A stretch of 64,000 nt of DNA, taken from the IMG/VR virus record IMGVR_UViG_3300023184_000025, positions 124,001 to 188,000 of that record; one strand, written 5' to 3'. This document shows positions 1-38,371 of the stretch, in pieces. The translations under genes and the position numbers were made by a program. Positions within the stretch are counted from its first letter, which is position 1; each line of letters starts with the position of its first letter. The notes under the pieces are model-generated. The model ran no database searches. It had not been told where the DNA came from and saw only the letters and a list, made by a program, of their open reading frames with translations.

Positions 1-352
1 CTAAACTCCAACTAGCGGGCTGTGCTTGAAAATATGTTGTCTCTTCGGCAGTGACAGTTACTTTAGCTCTACCTGTTGGTGCATTAAGTGTTACAAGCTC
101 TTTGGCATATAACAAATTTTCTCCGTCTTGACTAATCATACGAAACGTAAACGTTGCGCCTGTGATGTTTACAGGTTTTTGGTCCTGGTTTAGAAATTGG
201 AATAAAATAACATTATCCACTCCTAAATTTAATTTTAAGTCTTTTGCGTACACTGGTTGCCACCTTCTATCAAAAGTTGAGCCAATGCCTGACGTGTCAA
301 TCAGAATTACCTGTTGGATTTGCTGATATAAATAGGCAGTGGTTGAATACAT
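1..352 (-). CDS. Virion/baseplate protein with BppU-N-like beta-sandwich; 3' end runs off the window (not in ORF track)
   Basis: Manual translation from ATG 352: MYSTTAYLYQQIQQVILID...GVDNVILFQFLNQDQKPVNITGATFTFRM...TGRAKVTVTAEET, open to position 1. The 'F-x-N-x-D-x-KPV-x-ITG' pattern resembles BppU N-terminal domains. CATAAATA lies upstream at 376-369. Confidence 0.7.
   Translation of the reverse strand, partial: MYSTTAYLYQQIQQVILIDTSGIGSTFDRRWQPVYAKDLKLNLGVDNVILFQFLNQDQKPVNITGATFTFRMISQDGENLLYAKELVTLNAPTGRAKVTVTAEETTYFQAQPASWSL
327..334 (+). promoter_or_regulatory. T4-type late promoter TATAAATA
   Basis: Exact T4 gp55 consensus about 40 nt upstream of ATG 374. Confidence 0.55.
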
Positions 353-373
353 TTGGATCTCCAACTAATATTT

Positions 374-751
374 ATGGGTGATAATATCTTTACAAAATTG
401 ACTAAAAAGTATCCGTTTATAACTCTGTGTTTATATGCAGGGATAGAATACGTAGGAATTATACAAAATCAAGATGACGCAATTACAACAATCTACGACT
501 TTGGTGATGTTTCTGACCCTGAACTAAAAAAGCTGTTTATTGAGCTGGCCAATGATTGGTGGTGGGAAAGTAACCATAGTATACCTATAAACATATACTT
601 AAAAGCAGAGTGGGCTCCATTTAAGCCATATTTAAGAACTTTTGCCAACAAAGACCTTGAAATATTACACGGACCTGTTTGCAGTTTAAGTGACATCTCT
701 CGACGAAAAAGTAAACGTAAATCAATTACATTAGTCAGGAAGATTGACTAA
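374..751 (+). CDS. Hypothetical protein (125 aa; ATG 374 preferred over TTG 353)
   Basis: Protein-like ORF downstream of TATAAATA; no family recognised. Confidence 0.75.
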   Translation: MGDNIFTKLTKKYPFITLCLYAGIEYVGIIQNQDDAITTIYDFGDVSDPELKKLFIELANDWWWESNHSIPINIYLKAEWAPFKPYLRTFANKDLEILHGPVCSLSDISRRKSKRKSITLVRKID

Positions 752-27936: not shown

Positions 27937-29505
27937 TTACATCATTGTCATAACAAACGGCAGTGGTTCAATTACCACATCCTGGTGATCGCGCATTTGT
28001 TCGTCAAGATTCTGGTGATAACTCTGCAATAACTGCATCATTCTAACTACCAGTAAAGTTGACATTACCAGATCGTCTGTTTCTCCCATTTTTGCCGCAT
28101 AGCTTGCGCCTGACGCAACAAAGTTTTTAAGTTCACTGATCAGGCTTTTGCTGTTGATTTTCATACGCTTTGACTCAACCAGGTGTTTTAACTTGGCGCA
28201 AGCAGATAGCTTTGACTTGTTGGTTGTGTTAAATCCTTTACGGAATCTACGACTAACACTAACTCCGGGTTCGCTGAGGAAATAGCCTTGTATGTTTTCT
28301 TCTCCGTATTCAGCAATAGAAATTAGTGCGGCTTCCCCAATGGTGTTATTTTCCACTGAAAAATAGATACTTTTTGGGTCACGCACAGTTTCATTGATGT
28401 GTCGTATAATGTCGGCTAGTATTCTAACTTGGCCAGGAATGTCAGTTTTATTATGTCTCCATTCTCCAACTTGTAGTGTGGAGTTTGCATCAAATATCTG
28501 AATTGCTGCCGGGTCGCCGCCGGTGCCCAGACTAGGGTCAAGTGCAACAACATAAATTTTTTCAGGATCTATTCGACAATACCATCGTACTTCACCAGTT
28601 TTATAAGCTGGGTCTACACCTTCTAGATCAATCAATGTTGTTGGAGCAATCAGCGTTTCATCATTGATGATGAATTCGCAATCCATTTCACGTCGGAAAC
28701 GATCAGTGCCCAGGGCCGCACGTTGTTGTGTTGCCCAAGATTCATCACGGTCCGGATGCTCATTCCAAAAGCTACGATAGGCTTTGAAGCCATTGACACC
28801 AATTTCAGTAGGATTACCAAATTCATCTTCACAACGATTGGCGCCTTTCCATAACAGAGCAAACTGGTCTTCGTCACTGTTGGGAGTTGATGTAATAATT
28901 GCTTTACCACCAGTGGCTAGTGTGGGACTGATAGAAGTCCAAAATTCTGTGGCAATTGTAGGTCGGACAAATGCAAACTCGTCTGCGTACAGTAATGATA
29001 TACTCATACCACGACCGGTGTTTTCTGTGGTTGTTGCTGACACAATACGCGAGCCGTTGTCAAATTCTAAACTACCTTTGTTGTAACTTGTGACGCCAGC
29101 ACGAATATGATCAGGTACCGATTCATAGGCGTATCGTACCCGTTGCATGATCTCTTGTGCTCCTGTGTATTTGTGTGCGGCAACTAGTATAGTACTGTCA
29201 GGAATAAACATAGCATACCAAAGTAGATATCCGGCAGCTGATGTTGACTTACCTGTTTGTCGAGGCATCATTGAAATTGAATATCTATAATTATGGTAGG
29301 TATGAATTAGTCTACGTTGATATTCAAACGGATGATACAACATTCGACCACGAGTTGGGTGCTGTATATAGAAAAAATGGTCCATAAAATAAAGTGGACC
29401 ACTAGCAGGATCGGCACAGGCAATAAACTCATCAAGCTGTTGCTCGGTATAGTTAATACGTAAATGGGGTGGCTTAATTAAAACGCCTTCTAAAGACTTA
29501 CTCAT
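27937..29505 (-). CDS. gp17: Terminase large subunit
   Basis: PRQTGKST, GRGMS, Walker B ADEFAF, TSTPN, nuclease LDPSLG and DDLVM. Confidence 0.95.
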   Translation of the reverse strand: MSKSLEGVLIKPPHLRINYTEQQLDEFIACADPASGPLYFMDHFFYIQHPTRGRMLYHPFEYQRRLIHTYHNYRYSISMMPRQTGKSTSAAGYLLWYAMFIPDSTILVAAHKYTGAQEIMQRVRYAYESVPDHIRAGVTSYNKGSLEFDNGSRIVSATTTENTGRGMSISLLYADEFAFVRPTIATEFWTSISPTLATGGKAIITSTPNSDEDQFALLWKGANRCEDEFGNPTEIGVNGFKAYRSFWNEHPDRDESWATQQRAALGTDRFRREMDCEFIINDETLIAPTTLIDLEGVDPAYKTGEVRWYCRIDPEKIYVVALDPSLGTGGDPAAIQIFDANSTLQVGEWRHNKTDIPGQVRILADIIRHINETVRDPKSIYFSVENNTIGEAALISIAEYGEENIQGYFLSEPGVSVSRRFRKGFNTTNKSKLSACAKLKHLVESKRMKINSKSLISELKNFVASGASYAAKMGETDDLVMSTLLVVRMMQLLQSYHQNLDEQMRDHQDVVIEPLPFVMTMM

Positions 29506-29547: not shown

Positions 29548-30360
29548 TTAATCAGCTTTGCCACACTTGGCACGTTTAGCGTTGGTCAATGTGCCAAAAT
29601 CTACAGCCCATTCGGTGTCAGGTGTAATTTCTTTTGCATTAGCAGGAAATTTAAACTGTACACCTGCTTGACTTTGAATAGTAGAAATCATTGCACGGAA
29701 TTGAGTTAGATCGTTACCCAGGTTAACATAAGGTTTTGTATGTGGGAATGCCCAGCCAGCTATTTCATGAGTGACATTGTTGATTACAATTTTATAGTAA
29801 GCATGTGGCACAATAACACCGTTACCAATTGTTTCATCGCCGGCGCCATATAACGCACCCACATAGATTGTGTATGCTTGATTGCGTTGTACTACCCATC
29901 CACGTACTGATGTTTCTAACAGTTTCCAAATTCCACGATTAAGTGACCCGTGTTGTGGATACATGTTGGTCATTAGGAATGATTCGTACTCAACTTGCTC
30001 GCTCCAGGATAAATCACCGTCGGGCGCGGCATGGCCTTTGTCGTAGCCTGTGCCAGCATAGTCATCTGGCTTGGCACCATTTGGTACTGAACGATCAGCA
30101 ACAAATGCATTTGTTCTTGGCCAGCATCCTAATGCATTAGGTGGTGTTAGGGTATAGGCAACATAAACAGGAATCTTGACTGGTGCATCATACGCAACGA
30201 AGTACGCTTCGCGACATATAGGTTGTGCTGGTCGCTTTGTTTTTGCAAAGCCGTATGGGCTGTGTATTTGACATGCTTGTGGGGGTAATGGAGCACGTTG
30301 TTCCCATGCTTGAGCTAGACTTGATGCCGCTAGCAATACGGCAAATAACAGTTTTTTCAT
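29548..30360 (-). CDS. DNA/RNA non-specific endonuclease (Serratia NucA family) with Sec signal peptide
   Basis: MKKLLFAVLLAASSLAQA signal; YDKGH, TNMYPQ, LNRGIWKLLE. Confidence 0.9.
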   Translation of the reverse strand: MKKLLFAVLLAASSLAQAWEQRAPLPPQACQIHSPYGFAKTKRPAQPICREAYFVAYDAPVKIPVYVAYTLTPPNALGCWPRTNAFVADRSVPNGAKPDDYAGTGYDKGHAAPDGDLSWSEQVEYESFLMTNMYPQHGSLNRGIWKLLETSVRGWVVQRNQAYTIYVGALYGAGDETIGNGVIVPHAYYKIVINNVTHEIAGWAFPHTKPYVNLGNDLTQFRAMISTIQSQAGVQFKFPANAKEITPDTEWAVDFGTLTNAKRAKCGKAD

Positions 30361-30381: not shown

Positions 30382-30771
30382 TTAGCGTGGGTAACCTTTG
30401 AATGCGTTAATTGGACTTTTGTTATCAATAAATGGAGGTTCTTTGCTAGGACCAGTTGACACCATCTTTTTGCCGCCAGGAGTGTTGGTCATTTTAAGAG
30501 CAGAGTCAATTATCTGCGCAACGCTATTGTTCATTCCGACTACAATGCCGTGCTCACCAAATGTTGTTTCATCATGCCACTCGGGCATGTTAGGATTAAC
30601 CTCATCCTTAACAGCGTCACTTCTTGCACGAGCAATTGCTACACCAAATCTATAATTTTTATACGGGTCTGCGGCACTGAGGCCGGGAATCACATAGGTG
30701 TAGCGCATAGGGTCAGCTTGCTCAGCCGGCAACTGGGCGGATTGTTCAGTGATAAACTCGCGGGCTCTCAT
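30382..30771 (-). CDS. Putative internal head protein with capsid-targeting-like N-terminus
   Basis: MRAREFITEQ; ends SPINAFKGYPR; paralog of the adjacent gene. Confidence 0.7.
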   Translation of the reverse strand: MRAREFITEQSAQLPAEQADPMRYTYVIPGLSAADPYKNYRFGVAIARARSDAVKDEVNPNMPEWHDETTFGEHGIVVGMNNSVAQIIDSALKMTNTPGGKKMVSTGPSKEPPFIDNKSPINAFKGYPR

Positions 30772-31142
30772 CTTGGGTAGCCTTTGAATCCAGTAACAGG
30801 ACTGACTTTGTGTGTGTCGTTGGGTTCTTTACTAGAATGATCACGAATTAACTCATGTGCATCGGTTCCTGAAACTGTGTTAAATGCCTGTCTCATCATA
30901 TTATGTTCTGTTTCGGTATACGGATATGCCATATTATTCTTTCCAGCAAAACTTTCATCTTCCATGTCCAATGCTTTAGTACTTTTACCATCGGCCATAG
31001 CAGTTGCCTTCATTACCTGATTCAAGTGATATATTCTATCTGTACCATCATCCTTGAATTTATATGCGCCGCGAGAAACAGAGGCATGATCTTTATGCAT
31101 CTTGCCTTTTTTAGATTCAACAATAAATTCGTGTGCTCTCAT
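30768..31142 (-). CDS. Putative internal head protein with capsid-targeting-like N-terminus (start revised to 31142)
   Basis: MRAHEFIVES; TAATG-coupled; ends SPVTGFKGYPR. Confidence 0.7.
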   Translation of the reverse strand: MRAHEFIVESKKGKMHKDHASVSRGAYKFKDDGTDRIYHLNQVMKATAMADGKSTKALDMEDESFAGKNNMAYPYTETEHNMMRQAFNTVSGTDAHELIRDHSSKEPNDTHKVSPVTGFKGYPR

Positions 31143-31420
31143 TATGGTTGCCAAACGCCAACTTGCCCTGAGCTTGCAGTACCAACTTCTTGTATAGTAG
31201 CGTTAGATCCAGTGATTGTGAGTTGATTGCCAACTCCTACCCAAACAGTCACACGATTGTTTGCGGGAATCACAACAGGATTTGAATATAAATTACCAGT
31301 AGACGGACCGTATACTAAATTTACATTGTAGGTAACAGTATTTGTACCTGTGGATATTCTGGCTTTATCTGTGTACCATGTCTGGCTACTAGCAGATGTA
31401 TAAACGTTGGCTTGACTCAT
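31142..31420 (-). CDS. Small beta-rich virion-like hypothetical protein
   Basis: SD upstream; T/N/V/G-rich; coupled to the next gene. Confidence 0.7.
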   Translation of the reverse strand: MSQANVYTSASSQTWYTDKARISTGTNTVTYNVNLVYGPSTGNLYSNPVVIPANNRVTVWVGVGNQLTITGSNATIQEVGTASSGQVGVWQP

Positions 31421-31436
31421 GTTCTTATTTTCCTTT

Positions 31437-32498
31437 TTACCATGCTCGGCAAGACCAATAGCGAGCCGATGTCTTTGGACCAGGGTTCTCGCAATGATGT
31501 CTTGCTCTAAAACTCTTACGACGTGCAGGATTTGATTTCTTGATCTTCATTGTCTTTTGGCCAGCACGTTTTGCACTTGTTCCGCCATGTCCAAAGTTTA
31601 CTTTTTTAATGTTGCCAGTGCTGGGATCTTTAACATAGACTTTAAACTTTTTGACATCACCACGCATGGGTTTGCTCAGCGGCACATTACGTCCGTGATA
31701 CTCAGCTTCGGACATTTCAACTTCATCAGACTCGTCTTGATTACTTTCAATATAGTCAGCGGCTGTGTCAACATAGTCAGCGGCTTTGGTAATTTTTGAT
31801 TGCACCCACTCTGGCATGTTTTCGTTGTCGTCCAGCATGCCTGTTAAACGTCGGGCGGCACGAACAATAGTTTCAAGATCATCCTTGGCCATGTCACCTT
31901 CTTGGTCATATTCTCCGCTGTCTACAACATCAATGTTAGATTCTTTTACTTGATCTGAAGAATTGTCTAGTGTACGAATAACATCTCGTACCCAACCACT
32001 AACATCGCTGGATCCAATTTCTTCTACATCCCCTACCCACTCGGCAACATCTTTTACCGCATCCATTACTGCCTGCGGACCATGACGGCTCAGTAATCCT
32101 GGGTGTTGCATTAAAATACGATGTAGGATTGCACGTTCGGCTGGGGCTGGTTCATCGTCTAAACTTTCGTGTACACCTGGCATTGGGTTAGTAACATCTG
32201 TTTCCAATTCTTTTGCCGTTAACACACCAGCTGATTGATCTTCGCCAATGCTGTATCCCATGCCAGAACTGTTTCCTACTGCACCATAACGACGAATTTC
32301 TTCAGAAGTAAATCCGTGAGATTCTAATAGTTCAATTGCACGAGCATCGGCATGAAGGATAATATCGTTTCCAACCACGTCAACAATGTGTGTTTCTACC
32401 AGGCATTGTTCTCCGTAGTCAAAGGCAAATGTATCGCCAACAGCAGGAGTGGCGGACCACTCTTCGGCTTCAGTTAGATAATCTTTTAATGTTTTCAT
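31437..32498 (-). CDS. Modular internal head protein (353 aa) with basic C-terminal module
   Basis: MKTLKDYLTEA N-terminus; IGED, VHES, VKES and MSEA junctions; modules EGDMAK..LPEWVQSKITKA and RRKSFRARHHC..ARYWSCRAW. Confidence 0.72.
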   Translation of the reverse strand: MKTLKDYLTEAEEWSATPAVGDTFAFDYGEQCLVETHIVDVVGNDIILHADARAIELLESHGFTSEEIRRYGAVGNSSGMGYSIGEDQSAGVLTAKELETDVTNPMPGVHESLDDEPAPAERAILHRILMQHPGLLSRHGPQAVMDAVKDVAEWVGDVEEIGSSDVSGWVRDVIRTLDNSSDQVKESNIDVVDSGEYDQEGDMAKDDLETIVRAARRLTGMLDDNENMPEWVQSKITKAADYVDTAADYIESNQDESDEVEMSEAEYHGRNVPLSKPMRGDVKKFKVYVKDPSTGNIKKVNFGHGGTSAKRAGQKTMKIKKSNPARRKSFRARHHCENPGPKTSARYWSCRAW

Positions 32499-34681
32499 TT
32501 TCTAGAATAACGTTGATATAATTCCCACAGCCGGGCTTCCTGGCTTTCAGCCATTGGTCCAACTGATCCACGAGCTGGATCACGATTAAGAACCGGAGTA
32601 GTGGTTTGTCCTGTTGTCTTTGGTCCGTTTAAACCACCGCTGAGTGTTTTAGTCATTGTGTCAATGCCAGCATACTCTGTGTTGTCTGCGCTGTTAGCCA
32701 ACTCTTCGTCCACTTGTTCGCAACCACATTCTCTAGAACCGCAGGATGGGCAAACTTCCGAGTAACCTTCACTGCTACCGCCCATACCGGCCAACTTTAG
32801 AATCTGTGCTAGTTTTCCTGCATCTTCATCTGTGGCAGACACGTTAAGACTATTATGTCCTTCTGAATCAACAGTGGCATTGATATTCATGCTTTCGTTT
32901 AACACTTCAGTCATTCTAGCGTTGAAACTTTCAGCTAGTTTTGCTTCGTATACACCTTTACCGTACTGCATTCCGCTTTTGCTTGGAGTGCTGTCAGACG
33001 TTTCTTCAACTTCTTTTTTCTTGGCTTTCTTTTCAGGCAAGCCTTTGTGCTTGGTGGCAGCAAAGTCTTCAGCATCTTTCTTTTTCATAGTTTTGGCCAC
33101 TTTGCCAACTTCTTTGCTGGCTGGCTTCCCGCCTTTTTGTGCGGCATGAACCATGCCCATGAACTTTTGTTGCTTCTTGCTTGTTGCTTTTTCGTCAAGT
33201 TCTTTTTCATTGACCTGCGCATTACCTGGCTGATTGTTTTTAATCATGGTCATTGCGGCCCATAGTGAGCTTTCAAGACGACTAGCAAAGCCTGGTGGCA
33301 TTTGTCCTCCGCCCTGAGCTTTTTTGGCAATTGCACGTAGTTCAGCAAGTTCATTATAAATTTCTTGAGCCTGTCCTGAGTCAGAGCCTTCTTTGGTCAT
33401 TAACTTTGAAGTACCGCTTGGTCCTTTGGCACCAATACTCTTGCCTGTGCCTTTTGGACGACCTTTGCCGCGCTTGTCTCCTGCGGCTGGTGTATCATCT
33501 GTGCCCACGCTGTGGCCAGTATTGGGATCAACACGGCGTGTTACTTTTCGACCAGTTGCTGTGTGTTCAATATCATGCAATGCACCACGCTCGATAGAAC
33601 CAACTTTGGGTTTCTCTGGACGTGGCTTCTTCCATGATGTAAATGGATTGTTGTCATCTTCGTCAACTTCTCCTGGTGCACCTTTGATACCAGCGGCTTT
33701 GAGTGCGGCTGCTCTGTCTGGGTAGCCTTTAGTTCCGGGCTTGATGTCTTTGGATGCTTTTCCAATTGCGGCTTTTACCTTTGGCGAGGCATTGCTGGCA
33801 TTAACATGCTTCATTGTTGTTTTGGCCTGGTGACTTTTTGCACCCATTTTACCAATGGCACTTTTCATTGCTTCAGCAGCAACATCGCCCAACATTTCAT
33901 CAACTTCTTGTTTTGCGCCAGCAATTTTGTCAGCAAAAGTAATTTTGTCTTTGGGTTCGGCTAGTGCGGCAAATGATTTTTGCTTGGCAGTCATTGGAGA
34001 ACTACCTTCACCAAATTGCACATTGTCCCCTGCTGAGAATTGTGTGTTGGCCAAACGCTTTGGTAATCGACCTTTAGCAATGATAAAATCTAATTCCTGG
34101 TCTGTTGGGCCTGCTTGTTCTAGATCGTGAGCCAGGTCCTGCATTGCATCGTTGTCCCATATATCGTCGCCATACAATGCGGCAATTGAATCTAGTACTT
34201 TGTCAAAGTTAACTGCGCCTACAGCTTCACCAACGGGCTTTTTGCCTGTCTGTGGCAAGCCTGCTTTGCGTTGTAGGTCACGAATCATGTCTTCGTCGCT
34301 GCCATGGCCCAATGTGTCGAGGGCCTTCTGACCAACTTTCTTAACACCACTGCCAATTTTTTTAACTACATCGCCCATGTCTTCATCAAATGCATCGCCT
34401 ACTTTATCTCCGGCAATTGCGCCACCTACTGCTCCGAGTGGTCCCAGAGCCAGTGCACCTAGTCCAGCACCGATACCAGTTCCAATTATGCCTTCATCAA
34501 CTTCTTTAGCTTTACCGCCTTTGGCATCTTTGCCCAGTCGTCCAGCAATGACATCGCCACGTGTGACCTTGTCATAGGGCTTGGCATTGTTGGCCAAGTT
34601 GCCGTCGCCTTTGCCTTCTTTTAGTGTTTGTTTATCAGCCAGGTCACTCAGCTTTTTGTTTAAGTCGTAAAAAAATGTCAT
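32495..34681 (-). CDS. Putative prohead-core/internal head polyprotein (728 aa)
   Basis: Repeated LKEG, VDEG, VGEA, FGEG, VDEM, VDED, TKEG, LDEK, VEET, LAES, LNES, MAES; glycine zipper; AT-hook-like KGRPKG. Confidence 0.7.
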   Translation of the reverse strand: MTFFYDLNKKLSDLADKQTLKEGKGDGNLANNAKPYDKVTRGDVIAGRLGKDAKGGKAKEVDEGIIGTGIGAGLGALALGPLGAVGGAIAGDKVGDAFDEDMGDVVKKIGSGVKKVGQKALDTLGHGSDEDMIRDLQRKAGLPQTGKKPVGEAVGAVNFDKVLDSIAALYGDDIWDNDAMQDLAHDLEQAGPTDQELDFIIAKGRLPKRLANTQFSAGDNVQFGEGSSPMTAKQKSFAALAEPKDKITFADKIAGAKQEVDEMLGDVAAEAMKSAIGKMGAKSHQAKTTMKHVNASNASPKVKAAIGKASKDIKPGTKGYPDRAAALKAAGIKGAPGEVDEDDNNPFTSWKKPRPEKPKVGSIERGALHDIEHTATGRKVTRRVDPNTGHSVGTDDTPAAGDKRGKGRPKGTGKSIGAKGPSGTSKLMTKEGSDSGQAQEIYNELAELRAIAKKAQGGGQMPPGFASRLESSLWAAMTMIKNNQPGNAQVNEKELDEKATSKKQQKFMGMVHAAQKGGKPASKEVGKVAKTMKKKDAEDFAATKHKGLPEKKAKKKEVEETSDSTPSKSGMQYGKGVYEAKLAESFNARMTEVLNESMNINATVDSEGHNSLNVSATDEDAGKLAQILKLAGMGGSSEGYSEVCPSCGSRECGCEQVDEELANSADNTEYAGIDTMTKTLSGGLNGPKTTGQTTTPVLNRDPARGSVGPMAESQEARLWELYQRYSRK

Positions 34682-34691
34682 GTTGTTTTCC

Positions 34692-35291
34692 TTATTTCAT
34701 AAAGCCGGTTGCAGGCTTGGGTGGTCTTTTAATTGTTGTCAATGGGCTTTTGACTCCCATTGGCAGTTGATTTGTTGTCTGTGCAGGTGCAGTTTTGCCA
34801 CCAGCCACAGTCCATTTAGCATCAGCGGCAGAATTTTTAACAACTTCGTGCTCACTGGGTTCAGCGGCATAGTCAGCTTTTAATTTCTTTTGTTCAGCAT
34901 CTGTGGGTGGCAAATCTGTGGTTAGCAGATCCTTTTGATTTTCAATGCCCAATAACTCTTTGTCCATGCCTTCGGCCCAGTCACGTTGATCCATCACAAT
35001 GCTGTTTGCATCAAGACCCAGCAGTTCAGCAATCTGAACCACCTGTGGTGGTGTAGCCGGATATTTAAAACTAACATCAATGATGTTTACAGACTGATTA
35101 GCATGGTCTGGGAACCCAACTGGTTTAGATAAAATTGGGGTTTTCTTTGGCTCAGAGATTTTGATTGGGTCGAATTTTTTTAACTTTTCGTTAAAAGCTT
35201 TCATAAAACCACCTGGCAAATCACCAATGATTTTAATACGGTAATCAAAGGTTTGAGCACTTTCAATCAAGTATTGTGCAAATGTTTTCAT
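34692..35291 (-). CDS. Putative head protein with capsid-targeting-like N-terminus
   Basis: MKTFAQYLIES; TAAATA and AGGA SD upstream. Confidence 0.7.
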   Translation of the reverse strand: MKTFAQYLIESAQTFDYRIKIIGDLPGGFMKAFNEKLKKFDPIKISEPKKTPILSKPVGFPDHANQSVNIIDVSFKYPATPPQVVQIAELLGLDANSIVMDQRDWAEGMDKELLGIENQKDLLTTDLPPTDAEQKKLKADYAAEPSEHEVVKNSAADAKWTVAGGKTAPAQTTNQLPMGVKSPLTTIKRPPKPATGFMK

Positions 35292-35312: not shown

Positions 35313-35798
35313 TTATCGATCAGACGTCTTTGTGTTGGTTCGATCAACTAGTCTACTGAGTAATTCATTACGGTCAATAACAGCACCTTGACCAGTTGGC
35401 ATGTTGTTATTGTTAACATCATCTTTATCTAGTTTTGCTTTCTTTAACTGTAGATCAATCATCTTTAGCTTTTTATTCATCTTGGCAGTTTTTGCTGTGA
35501 TAGCATGGCCTAGCATCTGGCTGGCAACACTGAAAATTTCGCTAGCAAAACGGCTGTCTACTTGCATGCCCAGGTCCATAAGATTGTCAAATTCTTTAGT
35601 GGCCTTGGCAGCCAGTTCGTCCATTTCCTGATCACTGGCTTCTAGCCCTCGAACCGCAGGTAATGCTGCCTCAATCTTATCTAAGGCATCTAGGGTTTCT
35701 GGTAGTACTGGGAAAGTGGGCTGTGACTCAGGTGTCACAACAGTATCTTCAGAGTCTGAAGATGGAAGATCAAATAAAGATTCAAGTTTACGAGTCAT
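35313..35798 (-). CDS. gp16: Probable terminase small subunit (gp16-like)
   Basis: Size, helical hairpin plus coiled coil and GAVIDRNELL tail resemble gp16; TAAATA 4 nt before ATG. Confidence 0.55.
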   Translation of the reverse strand: MTRKLESLFDLPSSDSEDTVVTPESQPTFPVLPETLDALDKIEAALPAVRGLEASDQEMDELAAKATKEFDNLMDLGMQVDSRFASEIFSVASQMLGHAITAKTAKMNKKLKMIDLQLKKAKLDKDDVNNNNMPTGQGAVIDRNELLSRLVDRTNTKTSDR

Positions 35799-35813: not shown

Positions 35814-36245
35814 TTATTTGTTGCCGTTCTGGAATATGTCGTCTTCGGTAATTACTCTAAAAACCAGGCCCTGGCGCTGACACCATTTTTGAGCACTATC
35901 CCATTTGGCATAATTTACAGCAACCACAGCACGATCACGTTCACTCATTTTGCCTTCTATTACACTTTGCTTTTTGGGTTTGATTTCAATTACTTCAGCA
36001 AAGGTTTTGTTATTTTTTGTTCTGTATGTGACTAAAAAGTCTGGGATGTAATTAGAAATTTTACCGGTTAGTGGATGACGATAAGGAATAACAATAGACT
36101 CGCTGGCCCATTGAAGTATATTGTCGTTGCTGTCGCAAAATCGCATAAATGCTAATTCCCAGCCACTGCGATAACGAGGGCTACTATTGCCTACATACTT
36201 TTGTGTGTTTTCTACTTTATAAACACCTTGTGCAAACTTGCTCAT
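35814..36245 (-). CDS. gp4: Head completion nuclease (T4 gp4; TnsA-N-like)
   Basis: YRSGWE..FM..CD, WASE...IPY, YIPDF, IEIKP, NYAKW. Confidence 0.9.
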   Translation of the reverse strand: MSKFAQGVYKVENTQKYVGNSSPRYRSGWELAFMRFCDSNDNILQWASESIVIPYRHPLTGKISNYIPDFLVTYRTKNNKTFAEVIEIKPKKQSVIEGKMSERDRAVVAVNYAKWDSAQKWCQRQGLVFRVITEDDIFQNGNK

Positions 36246-36606: not shown

Positions 36607-37746
36607 TTAGTTCCTAGGTGGGGTTGGAAATAGTGGTGCTTGTAAACGTTGCTGGATGCTGGTCTGGCCGCCAGGCTGTGCTCTTACGGCGGCAGGAATA
36701 GTTGTACGTAGTACATCTTTGAGTCCAGCATTGGCTTCTTCTTTGATAATACTCTGAAGATTCTTTCCTTTAAACGTACCATAAGCTGTGCCTGCTTTTT
36801 GTACTGCACCGATAATACCTGCAACAGATCCACTTTGTAGGTCTTCATAGATACCAATACCGGCATCCAATAATCCGCCTTGTCCAATAATGCTGGAAGT
36901 GCCGCCAGGGCGGCTTAGTGGGCTTGGTTCCTGATCATAGTAATTTGGATCAGCGAATCCTTGAACATTTGTGTCAGGTCTAACTGCACCAATTGCGCCA
37001 CTATAGTATTTCACGGTTTCATAATTGATAGTCATTGAGTTTTGCATAACACCATCCCCTTGACTGTAATCATATGTATCATGAGACCAATCTGAGATCA
37101 TTGGGTTGATCAACACATACTCAACAAACTTGTGTTGATTGAATCCGTAAATTGAAATGTCTCTAAAGAACGCTGGCTTTCCGCCTGCGGCATTGGTACC
37201 ATCAGCATAGGCCTCTCCAATATAACCCCAGTCGTTGATAAATCTATCATTGGCATAGATGTCTCTGGTGTTATACCCAAAGCCGGCTGTTCTGTTTGCA
37301 TTTGCGCCCATAGAGCCGTTTGTGGATGTTTGTCCTCGGTAAGGTTGACTAGGATCTTTGTAGTAATAGCTGTAATAGTTATACCACATTGTACGAATTA
37401 AATCACCGCCATCATCATGAAAATCAACCTGACAAGGTTGATAGTTAATTTTTTTCTGAACCAACCGTTTTCTGTTGTACTGATTTAAAGTTTCTACTTC
37501 GATATTAAACTGCGGTAGTTGAATATTTTTTACTAACAGTCCAACTGTTGATTGCGACCCTGCTTGAAAGACCTGTCTCAGAGCAGGTATTTCAGTGGTG
37601 TTTATGTTAAAATAAACGTGGAAAAGAAACTTGAATCTGGGCAGGTTTTCGTAACCATTGGTACGAAATGTTTTACTCGCATGTGTATAATCTTTGAGAT
37701 AATCGTTCCCAAAGAATGTTTTAAGAAAGTCCTGCCCAAATGCCAT
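36607..37746 (-). CDS. Tail-tube-fold baseplate protein (gp54/gp48-like)
   Basis: LLVKNIQLPQF, QYNRKR, FHDD, and MQNSMTINYE; follows gp19. Confidence 0.75.
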   Translation of the reverse strand: MAFGQDFLKTFFGNDYLKDYTHASKTFRTNGYENLPRFKFLFHVYFNINTTEIPALRQVFQAGSQSTVGLLVKNIQLPQFNIEVETLNQYNRKRLVQKKINYQPCQVDFHDDGGDLIRTMWYNYYSYYYKDPSQPYRGQTSTNGSMGANANRTAGFGYNTRDIYANDRFINDWGYIGEAYADGTNAAGGKPAFFRDISIYGFNQHKFVEYVLINPMISDWSHDTYDYSQGDGVMQNSMTINYETVKYYSGAIGAVRPDTNVQGFADPNYYDQEPSPLSRPGGTSSIIGQGGLLDAGIGIYEDLQSGSVAGIIGAVQKAGTAYGTFKGKNLQSIIKEEANAGLKDVLRTTIPAAVRAQPGGQTSIQQRLQAPLFPTPPRN

Positions 37747-37753
37747 GTGCTAA

Positions 37754-38371
37754 TTAACCGCTGACTACGTTGTTTACAGTACGTGCAACAGTGGCACCAA
37801 CACCAGAACCAAGTGGAGTCTGGAGAGCGTTGTCGAAACGAATCTGCATTGTAATAGTTACAGCTTCACTTGATGAATAGTTCAAGTCATTGTAGTTAAC
37901 GTTGGACAAGTAGCAACCATACAATTCCCAAGTTTCAAGAACCACTGGAGTATATGCGCCATTACCGCCGTCTAGAATTTCACACTTGGTAGTGAACTTG
38001 TAGTCAATACCTGAAGCGGCACTGGCCTGCTCATAGAAGTCCAATTGCTTTTGTAGTTGTTCACCAACTAAACGAGCAACTTGACCGCTGGCGTCATCAC
38101 GTAGGTTAACAGTGACCTGCTCCCAACTGTGTTTACCAGCAACATATAACTTGCTGTTATAGATGTCAATTGGAATTTCTTCAAATGTTACCGACGGGCG
38201 AGTAAAGTCAATCACTTGCTTGGTCAATTCAGTACGCGGTGTCATGATACCGAAGTTTTCGAATATCGCACGAAAGCGATATTTAAGTTTTGGCATTAAC
38301 AAACCTTGGTTGGGATTACTTTGATCACTTGCCAAAGGAACTGTCATTCTGCTAATAGATGCTACGGCCAT
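37754..38371 (-). CDS. gp19: Tail tube protein
   Basis: KYRFR, RPSVTFE, AGKHSWE, WELYGCY, QIRFDNA; downstream of the sheath gene. Confidence 0.88.
   Translation of the reverse strand: MAVASISRMTVPLASDQSNPNQGLLMPKLKYRFRAIFENFGIMTPRTELTKQVIDFTRPSVTFEEIPIDIYNSKLYVAGKHSWEQVTVNLRDDASGQVARLVGEQLQKQLDFYEQASAASGIDYKFTTKCEILDGGNGAYTPVVLETWELYGCYLSNVNYNDLNYSSSEAVTITMQIRFDNALQTPLGSGVGATVARTVNNVVSG

What the first reader, a model, noticed from the sequence alone, without database searches (positions are those of the whole stretch)
30382..35291. Four genes with T4 capsid-targeting-sequence-like N-termini
Seen: MRAREFITEQ, MRAHEFIVES, MKTLKDYLTEA and MKTFAQYLIES. The first two are tandem paralogs ending in FKGYPR. 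Known: T4 IPII/IPIII use MKTYQEFIAE for encapsidation, and IPI blocks the GmrSD restriction system. Inference: a set of uncharacterised packaged internal proteins, and good candidates for new anti-defence factors.
Basis: partly seen in the sequence, partly recalled or inferred. Interest (0 to 1): 0.6.

Follow-up and report, generated by a model that had tools for sequence, protein, structure and literature searches.

The report
T4-like capsid-targeting leaders, jumbo phage
Four genes of an uncultured 345-kb phage start with a short tag very like the one phage T4 uses to load proteins into its head, so they probably encode proteins packaged with the DNA; whether they counter host defences is untested.

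Summary
All four minus-strand genes exist with the stated N-termini. The strict leader motif occurs 5 times in the 345-kb genome against 0.02 expected from shuffles.

The tags match real T4 IPII/IPIII/IPI leaders in register from the cleavage site: aromatic at P4, Leu/Ile at P3, Glu at P1. The genome, just outside the window, encodes a T4 gp21-type prohead protease with its His and Ser kept. It also has gp67-like, gp22-like and gp23-like proteins whose predicted cleavage sites have the same shape.

The leaders sit on proteins that are otherwise unrelated. They are the best-conserved segment of each family, and their codons vary synonymously. The MRA-type tag starts genes in at least 119 IMG/VR contigs, on varied cargo including GNAT acetyltransferases.

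Homologues of the 199-aa protein, and the proteins encoded beside them, are mass-spectrometry-confirmed virion proteins in the cultured phages PA5oct and Atu_ph07.

Best reading (about 0.7): these are propeptide tags that load proteins into the prohead and are cut off after (L/I)xE. Packaging and cleavage are inferred, not shown.

The anti-defence idea has no support for these four genes, which form a conserved cassette. A hypervariable second leader locus at the contig ends is the better place to look. This is a new member of a known kind.

The parts
34692..35291 (-). 199-aa protein with an MKT-class leader (MKTFAQYLIE|S; leader codons 35262-35291). Conserved core virion protein of this lineage. 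Ferredoxin-like domain at about residues 14-118, disordered C-terminal third.
   Evidence: ORF. In 23 orthologues M1 K2 F4 Q6 Y7 L8 E10 S11 are invariant. Homologues PA5oct gp202 and Atu_ph07 gp113 are ESI-MS/MS virion proteins. AF2 model, pLDDT 65.6. Foldseek finds only uncharacterised viral proteins.
32495..34681 (-). 728-aa basic, low-complexity protein with a DUF3008-like segment. It may carry a longer leader ending TLKE at residue 22.
   Evidence: ORF. DUF3008 and PHROG matches at residues 491-563. Orthologues keep a hydrophobic N-terminus followed by [LV]xE at residues 15-27. The genes at the same position, PA5oct gp203 and Atu_ph07 gp112, are virion proteins.
31437..32498 (-). 353-aa acidic protein with an MKT-class leader (MKTLKDYLTE|A; leader codons 32469-32498). 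It has a conserved N-domain, a variable acidic middle, and a basic Cys/Trp-containing C-terminal domain (phrog_7595).
   Evidence: ORF. PHROG. Orthologues of 155-524 aa keep the leader (mean conservation 0.71) while the middle falls to 0.2-0.4.
31142..31420 (-). 92-aa cassette member without a leader; function unknown.
   Evidence: ORF. Present at the same position in the related loci. No family match.
30768..31142 (-). 124-aa protein with an MRA-class leader (MRAHEFIVE|S; leader codons 31116-31142). Subfamily B of the tandem pair; ends FKGYPR.
   Evidence: The start ATG overlaps the upstream stop.
30382..30771 (-). 129-aa protein with an MRA-class leader (MRAREFITE|Q; leader codons 30745-30771). 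Subfamily A of the tandem pair; ends FKGYPR.
   Evidence: AF2 model is low-confidence (pLDDT 58).
35313..35798 (-). Small-terminase-like gene that bounds the cassette upstream (weak assignment).
   Evidence: phrog_445, terminase small subunit, E 2.6e-4; phrog_16202, E 1.5e-12. Same position in PA5oct and in the related loci.
27937..29505 (-). Large terminase, T4 gp17 type, bounding the cassette downstream.
   Evidence: Terminase_6N and Terminase_6C. 53% identity to the PA5oct large terminase.

Best explanation
The four genes, and probably the 728-aa gene among them, encode internal head proteins of a T4-superfamily jumbo phage. Each is made with a 9-10-residue N-terminal propeptide, and I propose the 728-aa protein has one of about 22 residues.

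The propeptide would work like T4's capsid targeting sequence. It would bind the assembling scaffold core, so the protein is enclosed when the capsid shell forms. The phage's gp21-type serine protease would then cut after the Glu of an aromatic-(Leu/Ile)-x-Glu site, freeing the mature protein inside the head. The mature protein would stay with the DNA and probably leave with it at infection.

What is shown:
- The tags exist and are far beyond chance.
- They match T4 leaders in register.
- They are shared by unrelated proteins and conserved at protein level.
- The protease and T4-type core genes are present.
- Homologues of one of the four are virion proteins in cultured relatives.

What is inferred:
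- Binding of the tags to the core.
- Cleavage at the proposed sites.
- Ejection into the host.
- Any role after ejection.
For: 1) Register match to T4. Counted back from the cut, T4 IPII/IPIII read Y-Q-E-F-I-A-E. The MRA class reads A-R-E-F-I-T-E, identical at P5, P4, P3 and P1. The MKT class reads F-A-Q-Y-L-I-E, with aromatic P7 and P4, aliphatic P3 and Glu P1. In T4, residues 4 and 7 carry targeting and residues 8 and 10 carry processing (PMC9026906). T4 gp21 cuts after Glu in I/LxE (PMC12991175).

2) The machinery is present, at genome 193-199 kb just outside the window. The gene order is portal, gp67-like, Peptidase_S77 protease (E 6.5e-25), gp22-like scaffold, gp23-like capsid protein, as in T4. 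The protease aligns with gp21 at E 7e-19. It keeps the His and Ser that align with T4's catalytic H85 and S140; those two catalytic residues are named.

3) Internal controls have sites of the same shape. The capsid protein has KYLKE|N ahead of the conserved core, kept in three relatives and as RFLVE|N in PA5oct. The gp67-like protein begins MSKFEQLIE and aligns with T4 gp67 MEGLIE. The protease begins MALYLRE, as T4 gp21 has LIE at residue 9.

4) The tags are modular. All-against-all BLAST shows that the MRA proteins at genome 707-1375 and 344134-344553 share only their first 8-23 residues with the window genes. In a relative, one cargo body carries a different leader.

5) The constraint is at protein level. 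The first 10 alignment columns are the most conserved block: 0.82 against 0.38-0.63 in the MRA family, 0.95 against 0.57-0.90 in the 199-aa family, and 0.71 against 0.2-0.6 in the variable family. The leader codons differ synonymously between copies. Two orthologues that lack Glu at residue 9 have LGE or ITE at residues 11-13 instead.

6) The tag is widespread. The MRA leader starts genes in at least 119 IMG/VR contigs. Of 76 complete frames, 75 are 50 aa or longer, and only 4 of the 85 matches have an upstream in-frame ATG. Cargo includes GNAT acetyltransferases. Four of five tagged contigs of 121-340 kb have the S77 protease; the five smaller fragments (80-141 kb) do not.

7) Virion presence in cultured relatives. 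PA5oct gp202 and gp203 are ESI-MS/MS structural proteins. Atu_ph07 gp113 (11 peptides, 62% coverage), gp112 and gp111 are virion proteins. The true start of gp113 reads MKTLQDYLTE|S.
Against: There is no direct evidence that any of these proteins is packaged or cleaved. The phage is uncultured.

PA5oct gp202 and the Phosso homologue keep residues 4 and 7 but lack Leu-x-Glu (MKSFRDYYDA, MKNFYEYLSS). In those phages the N-terminus may not be cut, or it may simply be part of the protein.

PA5oct has no shared leader family at all. Virion evidence therefore exists only for the 199-aa family and its neighbours, not for the MRA pair or the 353-aa protein.

One MRA-tagged gene elsewhere has a twin-arginine export signal directly after the tag, followed by LysM and SLT domains. 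That fits export as well as packaging.

The mature proteins are not markedly basic, with pI 4.9-8.8.

The protease-substrate complex prediction gave no answer.
Confidence: 0.7

Rival explanations
1. The proteins are targeted and cleaved as proposed, but they are housekeeping internal or core proteins. They would act in DNA condensation, core architecture or ejection mechanics, not as anti-defence effectors. This rivals the reader's functional inference, not the targeting mechanism.
For: The cassette order and content are conserved across 43 related loci at 61-98% identity for the 199-aa protein, 29-33% in the four most distant loci. The 199-aa family reaches PA5oct, Atu_ph07 and Phosso. It is an abundant virion protein in Atu_ph07, with 62% coverage. 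Both MRA subfamilies are kept as a pair in nearly every relative. There is no similarity to T4 IPs or to any named family.
Against: Conservation does not exclude a counter-defence role against a conserved host system. The middle of the 353-aa family varies greatly in length, from 155 to 524 aa. T4 IPII and IPIII also have no proven defence target.
Confidence: 0.45
2. The shared N-terminus is a functional module of another kind, and the proteins are neither enclosed in the head nor cleaved. It could be a docking peptide for another assembly or chaperone, an export-related N-region, or a translation-initiation or expression element.
For: One MRA-tagged gene elsewhere continues directly into a twin-arginine signal with LysM and SLT domains. 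PA5oct and Phosso homologues of the 199-aa protein lack the Leu-x-Glu site. No cleavage has been observed.
Against: The tag matches T4's proven targeting and cleavage tag at the functionally mapped positions. It co-occurs with a gp21-type protease. Synonymous codon variation argues against an RNA- or DNA-level element. When Glu-9 is lost, a Leu/Ile-x-Glu site reappears a few residues later, which only makes sense for a cleavage site. Homologues are in virions.
Confidence: 0.15
3. The similarity is only a relic of gene duplication or a chance resemblance, with no function of its own.
For: The 129-aa and 124-aa genes are true tandem paralogues.
Against: Five occurrences against 0.02 expected. 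The other tagged proteins share nothing beyond the tag. The tag is the most conserved block in three families. It heads genes in at least 119 contigs, against roughly four expected by chance; that figure is my estimate from the pattern's information content.
Confidence: 0.03

Closest known systems
T4 internal proteins IPI, IPII, IPIII and their capsid targeting sequence (Mullaney and Black 1996; reviewed in PMC9026906 and PMC3012670)
   Same: A short N-terminal tag of 10-19 residues sits on otherwise unrelated proteins. Aromatic residues at positions 4 and 7 are followed by Leu/Ile-x-Glu. The phage has a gp21-type protease and a T4-type scaffold core. The MKT class even begins MKT like T4, and the MRA class shares E-F-I-x-E with IPII/IPIII.
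   Different: The phage lineage is different: an uncultured jumbo clade nearest Arenbergviridae/PA5oct and Atu_ph07, with 53% large-terminase identity. The mature proteins are unrelated to T4 IPs and are not strongly basic. The window cassette lies between the terminase genes and is conserved rather than hypervariable. A second consensus (MRAxEFIxE, 9 residues) dominates.
T4 Alt, a packaged ADP-ribosyltransferase that has a propeptide
   Same: An enzyme cargo loaded into the head by a cleavable N-terminal propeptide. Here GNAT acetyltransferases carry the MRA tag, both in this genome (outside the window) and in other contigs.
   Different: The enzyme class is different. None of the four window genes has a recognisable enzyme domain.
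Propeptides of phiKZ, 201phi2-1 and SPN3US ejection proteins
   Same: These are jumbo phages whose gp21-related protease removes N-terminal propeptides after Glu. Paralogues share identical N-termini that the authors liken to a CTS (PMC5694885).
   Different: Those phages use A/S/G-x-E sites and mostly long propeptides of more than 100 residues. Here the site is Leu/Ile-x-Glu and the tags are T4-length.

Membership tests
T4-type capsid-targeting-sequence (CTS) proteins | Short N-terminal leader (10-19 residues) shared by proteins whose mature parts are unrelated | tested here: met
   All-against-all BLAST: similarity between tagged proteins from different families is confined to the first 8-23 residues. 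An unsupervised N-terminal comparison recovers the MRA and MKT groups.
T4-type capsid-targeting-sequence (CTS) proteins | Leader ends in the gp21 cleavage consensus Leu/Ile-x-Glu | tested here: met
   ITE, IVE, LTE and LIE at residues 7-9 or 8-10 in the four genes. Orthologues that lose Glu-9 gain LGE or ITE at residues 11-13.
T4-type capsid-targeting-sequence (CTS) proteins | Targeting determinants: hydrophobic or aromatic residues at positions 4 and 7 of the IPIII leader | tested here: inconclusive
   The MKT class has F or L at position 4 and Y at position 7, invariant in 23 orthologues. The MRA class is one residue shorter: it keeps the P4 aromatic (F6) but has Ala at the P7 position. Whether that still targets is unknown.
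T4-type capsid-targeting-sequence (CTS) proteins | Phage encodes a gp21-type prohead protease and a T4-type scaffold core | tested here: met
   Peptidase_S77 E 6.5e-25, with the catalytic His and Ser aligned. gp67-like, gp22-like and gp23-like genes lie in T4 order at genome 193-199 kb.
T4-type capsid-targeting-sequence (CTS) proteins | Protein is physically inside the mature head | not testable with these tools
   Indirect only. Homologues of the 199-aa protein and the proteins encoded beside them are ESI-MS/MS virion proteins in PA5oct and Atu_ph07. There are no data for the MRA pair or the 353-aa protein.
T4-type capsid-targeting-sequence (CTS) proteins | Leader is removed in the virion | not testable with these tools
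   No N-terminal peptide data. The Atu_ph07 search database used a start 29 codons too late, so it could not have seen the leader.
T4 IPI / IPII / IPIII protein families | Sequence similarity of the mature protein to IPI, IPII or IPIII | tested here: not met
   BLASTP against the three T4 proteins gives only leader matches and noise, best E 0.045. There are no PHROG or Pfam internal-protein families.
T4 IPI-like anti-restriction locus | Hypervariable gene content between close relatives | tested here: not met
   The window cassette is conserved in order across related loci. The second leader locus at the contig ends, outside the window, does differ between this genome and relatives G001 and G002; G002 is 98% identical in the 199-aa protein.

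The most novel reading that the evidence does not exclude
The MRAxEFIxE and MKTxxxYLxE tags are a portable capsid-loading signal used across a large clade of uncultured freshwater-type jumbo phages. If so, every tagged gene can be read from sequence alone as part of the injected proteome. That set includes GNAT acetyltransferases and the fast-changing genes at the second locus. It would include new host-takeover or anti-defence effectors delivered with the DNA.
Probability: 0.3. Interest if true: 0.7.

Novelty: new member of a known kind. Interest (0 to 1): 0.55.

Why it matters
T4's capsid targeting sequence is the textbook way a phage loads proteins into its head and delivers them with its DNA. 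It is also used as an engineering tool. It has so far been described for T4 and its close relatives; in the paper library searched, no paper reports it for the PA5oct/Atu_ph07-type or uncultured jumbo phages.

A recognisable tag in this lineage has three consequences:
- It gives a sequence-only way to list the likely packaged proteins of phages that cannot be grown.
- It points to packaged enzymes such as acetyltransferases.
- It is testable in the cultured phage Atu_ph07, whose gp113 carries the tag once its start codon is corrected.

It would also extend the range of phages in which tag-directed protein packaging could be engineered.

Tried and rejected
- Megablast of the region against GenBank phages: no match.
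- Pfam and PHROGs on the four proteins: no named family. The only hits are phrog_7595 and phrog_32745, both of unknown function, on the 353-aa protein. This held at lenient thresholds too.
- ESM Atlas feature search on the 353-aa and 129-aa proteins: only sub-threshold leads, DUF6321 and DUF5824 at scores of 0.79 or lower.
- AlphaFold2 of the 129-aa family: pLDDT 58, too poor to search.
- Foldseek of the 199-aa model against the PDB: only generic ferredoxin-like folds (ribosomal S6, HPPK, GlnK) at TM about 0.3. Against viral models it found only uncharacterised proteins.
- Complex prediction of the protease with residues 1-120 of the 199-aa protein: no answer, score 0.00. This is not evidence either way.
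- T4 late-promoter motif TATAAATA: not enriched, and absent from the cassette.
- Sigma-70 promoter and terminator scans: at background. The tight spacing and overlapping stop/start codons suggest one late operon.
- Search for a shared leader family in PA5oct: none.
- PA5oct paper: no mention of cleavage of these proteins, and no supplement held.
- The big protein searches and the read-mapping tools were not used. The claim does not rest on absence of relatives or on expression.
Full report
**What the window is.** The window is bases 124001-188000 of a 345,154-bp IMG/VR virus record that is about 99% complete, with 40% G+C. By large terminase its nearest cultured relatives are Pseudomonas phage PA5oct at 53% identity, Sinorhizobium phage Phosso and Agrobacterium phage Atu_ph07. 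All three are jumbo myoviruses of the T4 superfamily. Megablast finds no close GenBank phage.

**The observation.** They lie in a tightly packed run of genes, read here from upstream to downstream on the minus strand:
- tail tube genes (37754-38371 and 36607-37746)
- a 120-aa gene
- a gp4-like head-closure gene (35814-36245)
- a small-terminase-like gene (35313-35798)
- the 199-aa gene
- a 728-aa gene
- the 353-aa gene
- a 92-aa gene
- the 124-aa and 129-aa tandem pair
- a secreted nuclease
- the large terminase (27937-29505)

Gaps between the genes are 10-42 bases or are overlapping ATGA/TAATG junctions.

The tandem pair are paralogues: 24% identity, E 2.7e-7, both ending FKGYPR.

The strict leader motif occurs 5 times in the genome against 0.02 expected from shuffles.

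**Comparison with real T4 leaders.** From the T4 record, IPII and IPIII begin MKTYQEFIAE, and IPI begins MKTFKEF with ITE at residues 17-19. A review of the T4 work states four points (PMC9026906):
- The leaders are 10-19 residues long.
- Residues 4 and 7 of the IPIII leader carry targeting.
- Residues 8 and 10 carry processing.
- Asp at position 10 blocks cleavage but not targeting.

T4 gp21 cuts after Glu in I/LxE motifs (PMC12991175).

The MKT class here (MKTFAQYLIE, MKTLKDYLTE) has F or L at 4, Y at 7, L at 8 and E at 10. The MRA class (MRAREFITE, MRAHEFIVE) is one residue shorter. Counted back from the Glu, it reads E-F-I-x-E exactly as in IPII/IPIII.

**The machinery.** Just outside the window, at genome 193-199 kb, the gene order is portal, a 271-aa acidic protein, a Peptidase_S77 protease, a 362-aa coiled-coil scaffold and a gp23-type capsid protein. 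This is the T4 order 20-67-(68)-21-22-23.
- The protease aligns with T4 gp21 at E 7e-19. It keeps the His and Ser that align with T4 H85 and S140, the residues mutated to make catalytically dead gp21.
- The acidic protein begins MSKFEQLIE and aligns with T4 gp67, which begins MEGLIE.
- The capsid protein has KYLKE followed by NASAG about 40 residues ahead of the conserved core. This site is conserved in three relatives and appears as RFLVE in PA5oct. It lies within about ten residues of where T4 gp23's FLTE|A site falls in the pairwise alignment.
- The protease itself begins MALYLRE, as T4 gp21 has LIE at residue 9.

So the substrates that must be cleaved in a T4-type head carry sites of the same aromatic-Leu/Ile-x-Glu shape as the four leaders.

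**The tags are modular and under protein-level selection.** The genome holds more tagged genes. At the contig ends lie three tandem genes:
- 139 aa at 344134-344553
- 436 aa running across the junction of the two contig ends, with a GNAT acetyltransferase domain
- 222 aa at 707-1375

All three begin MRAQ(E/D)FI. They share nothing with the window genes beyond the first 8-23 residues.

In relatives this second locus has different gene content. One cargo body carries an MRA leader in G001 but a different leader, ending LFE, in this genome.

Across 43 related IMG/VR loci the window cassette is conserved in order. The first ten alignment columns are the best-conserved block in all three families. 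M1, R2, A3, E5 and F6 are invariant in the MRA family. M1, K2, F4, Q6, Y7, L8, E10 and S11 are invariant in the 199-aa family.

The leader DNA differs by synonymous codons between copies, and the reversed-pattern control finds nothing. Two orthologues without Glu at residue 9 have LGE or ITE at residues 11-13.

**Distribution.** From the pattern's information content I expect roughly four by chance; that figure is my own estimate. In the 80 loci fetched:
- 75 of 76 complete frames are 50 aa or longer, and only 4 of the 85 matches have an upstream in-frame ATG.
- Cargo ranges from 67 to 446 aa.
- Cargo includes many members of the FKGYPR family, several GNAT acetyltransferases, DUF6321 and DUF6934 proteins, and one LysM-SLT protein with a twin-arginine signal.
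- Four of five tagged contigs of 121-340 kb contain a Peptidase_S77 gene. The five smaller fragments, 17-40% complete, do not, which says nothing either way.

**Virion evidence from cultured relatives.** In PA5oct two genes lie between the small-terminase-like gene and the large terminase. These are gp202, the homologue of the 199-aa protein, and gp203. Both are annotated as ESI-MS/MS structural proteins.

In Atu_ph07 the three genes upstream of the terminase are all in the virion proteome (PMC6102473 Table S5):

| Protein | Unique peptides | Coverage |
|---|---|---|
| gp113 (homologue of the 199-aa protein) | 11 | 62% |
| gp112 | 15 | 29.6% |
| gp111 | 2 | 23.9% |

The deposited start of gp113 is 29 codons too far downstream. 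The upstream in-frame ATG gives MKTLQDYLTE followed by S. The published search therefore could not have seen the leader.

PA5oct gp202 (MKSFRDYYDA) and the Phosso homologue (MKNFYEYLSS) keep positions 4 and 7 but not Leu-x-Glu. Given the T4 data, this could mean targeting without cleavage, but it is also the main caution.

**What the proteins are.** None has a named family.
- The 199-aa protein folds as a ferredoxin-like domain (residues 14-118, pLDDT about 80) with a separate short helix at residues 4-10 and a disordered tail. Its structural neighbours are uncharacterised viral proteins, including one from Atu_ph07.
- Predicted mature sizes and pI are 13.1 kDa/6.9, 12.9 kDa/8.8, 37.9 kDa/4.9 and 20.7 kDa/7.8.
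- The 728-aa protein is basic and of low complexity, with a DUF3008-like segment. Its orthologues keep a hydrophobic N-terminus followed by [LV]xE at residues 15-27. I count it as a probable fifth member with a longer, IPI-like leader.

**Verdict.** The capsid-targeting reading is the best explanation, at about 0.7. The anti-defence reading is unsupported for these four genes. They look like conserved internal components. The hypervariable locus at the contig ends and the tagged enzymes are the better candidates.

The mechanism is T4's. The lineage, the MRA consensus and the cargo are new, so this is a new member of a known kind. 

Noticed in passing
outside the window: genome 193248-194465 (minus strand): The gp23-type major capsid gene has an in-frame TAA at codon 302. 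The related genome G002 (98% identical in the 199-aa protein) has GAA (Glu) there, and three relatives have intact 405-aa genes. This is either an assembly error or an ochre variant in the sampled population.
   Followed up: partly
outside the window: genome 344550-345154 joined to 1-706 (minus strand): The two contig ends join into one open 436-aa frame with an MRA leader and a GNAT domain. The record is therefore a circularly permuted assembly, not a true linear end. Three tandem MRA-tagged genes sit there in a locus whose content differs from that of relatives G001 and G002.
   Followed up: partly
window 29548-30360 (minus strand): A DNA/RNA non-specific endonuclease (PF01223, E 4e-37) with a Sec-type signal peptide lies between the leader genes and the large terminase. 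Several relatives carry a different 145-aa secreted protein at that place.
   Followed up: no
L195:4001-4756 (Atu_ph07, MF403008.1, gp113 / AUZ94910): The deposited start codon is 29 codons too far downstream. The upstream in-frame ATG yields an MKT-class leader ending LTE.
   Followed up: yes
L108:413-1294 (+): An MRA-tagged gene in another viral contig continues directly into a twin-arginine export signal, then LysM and SLT lytic-transglycosylase domains. A second MRA-tagged gene follows it. This is hard to reconcile with simple head packaging.
   Followed up: no
window 30382-30399 and 30768-30785 (C-terminal codons of the tandem pair): The MRA short family has an invariant C-terminal S-P-x-x-x-F-x-G-Y-P-R in 24 sequences. 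The 728-aa protein contains TKGYPDR. The role is unexplained; it could be a second interaction motif.
   Followed up: no
window 35814-36245 (minus strand): A T4 gp4-like head-closure protein with a TnsA-like endonuclease fold (PF08722, E 1.4e-20; phrog_218, E 2.3e-41) sits just upstream of the small-terminase-like gene, as in PA5oct.
   Followed up: no
PA5oct genome ends (MK797984.1, 400-3000 and 280600-286400): PA5oct has a 16-member family of small genes (55-113 aa) sharing MD(L/F/I)IL-type N-termini, clustered mainly at both genome ends. It is unrelated to the leaders studied here.
   Followed up: no
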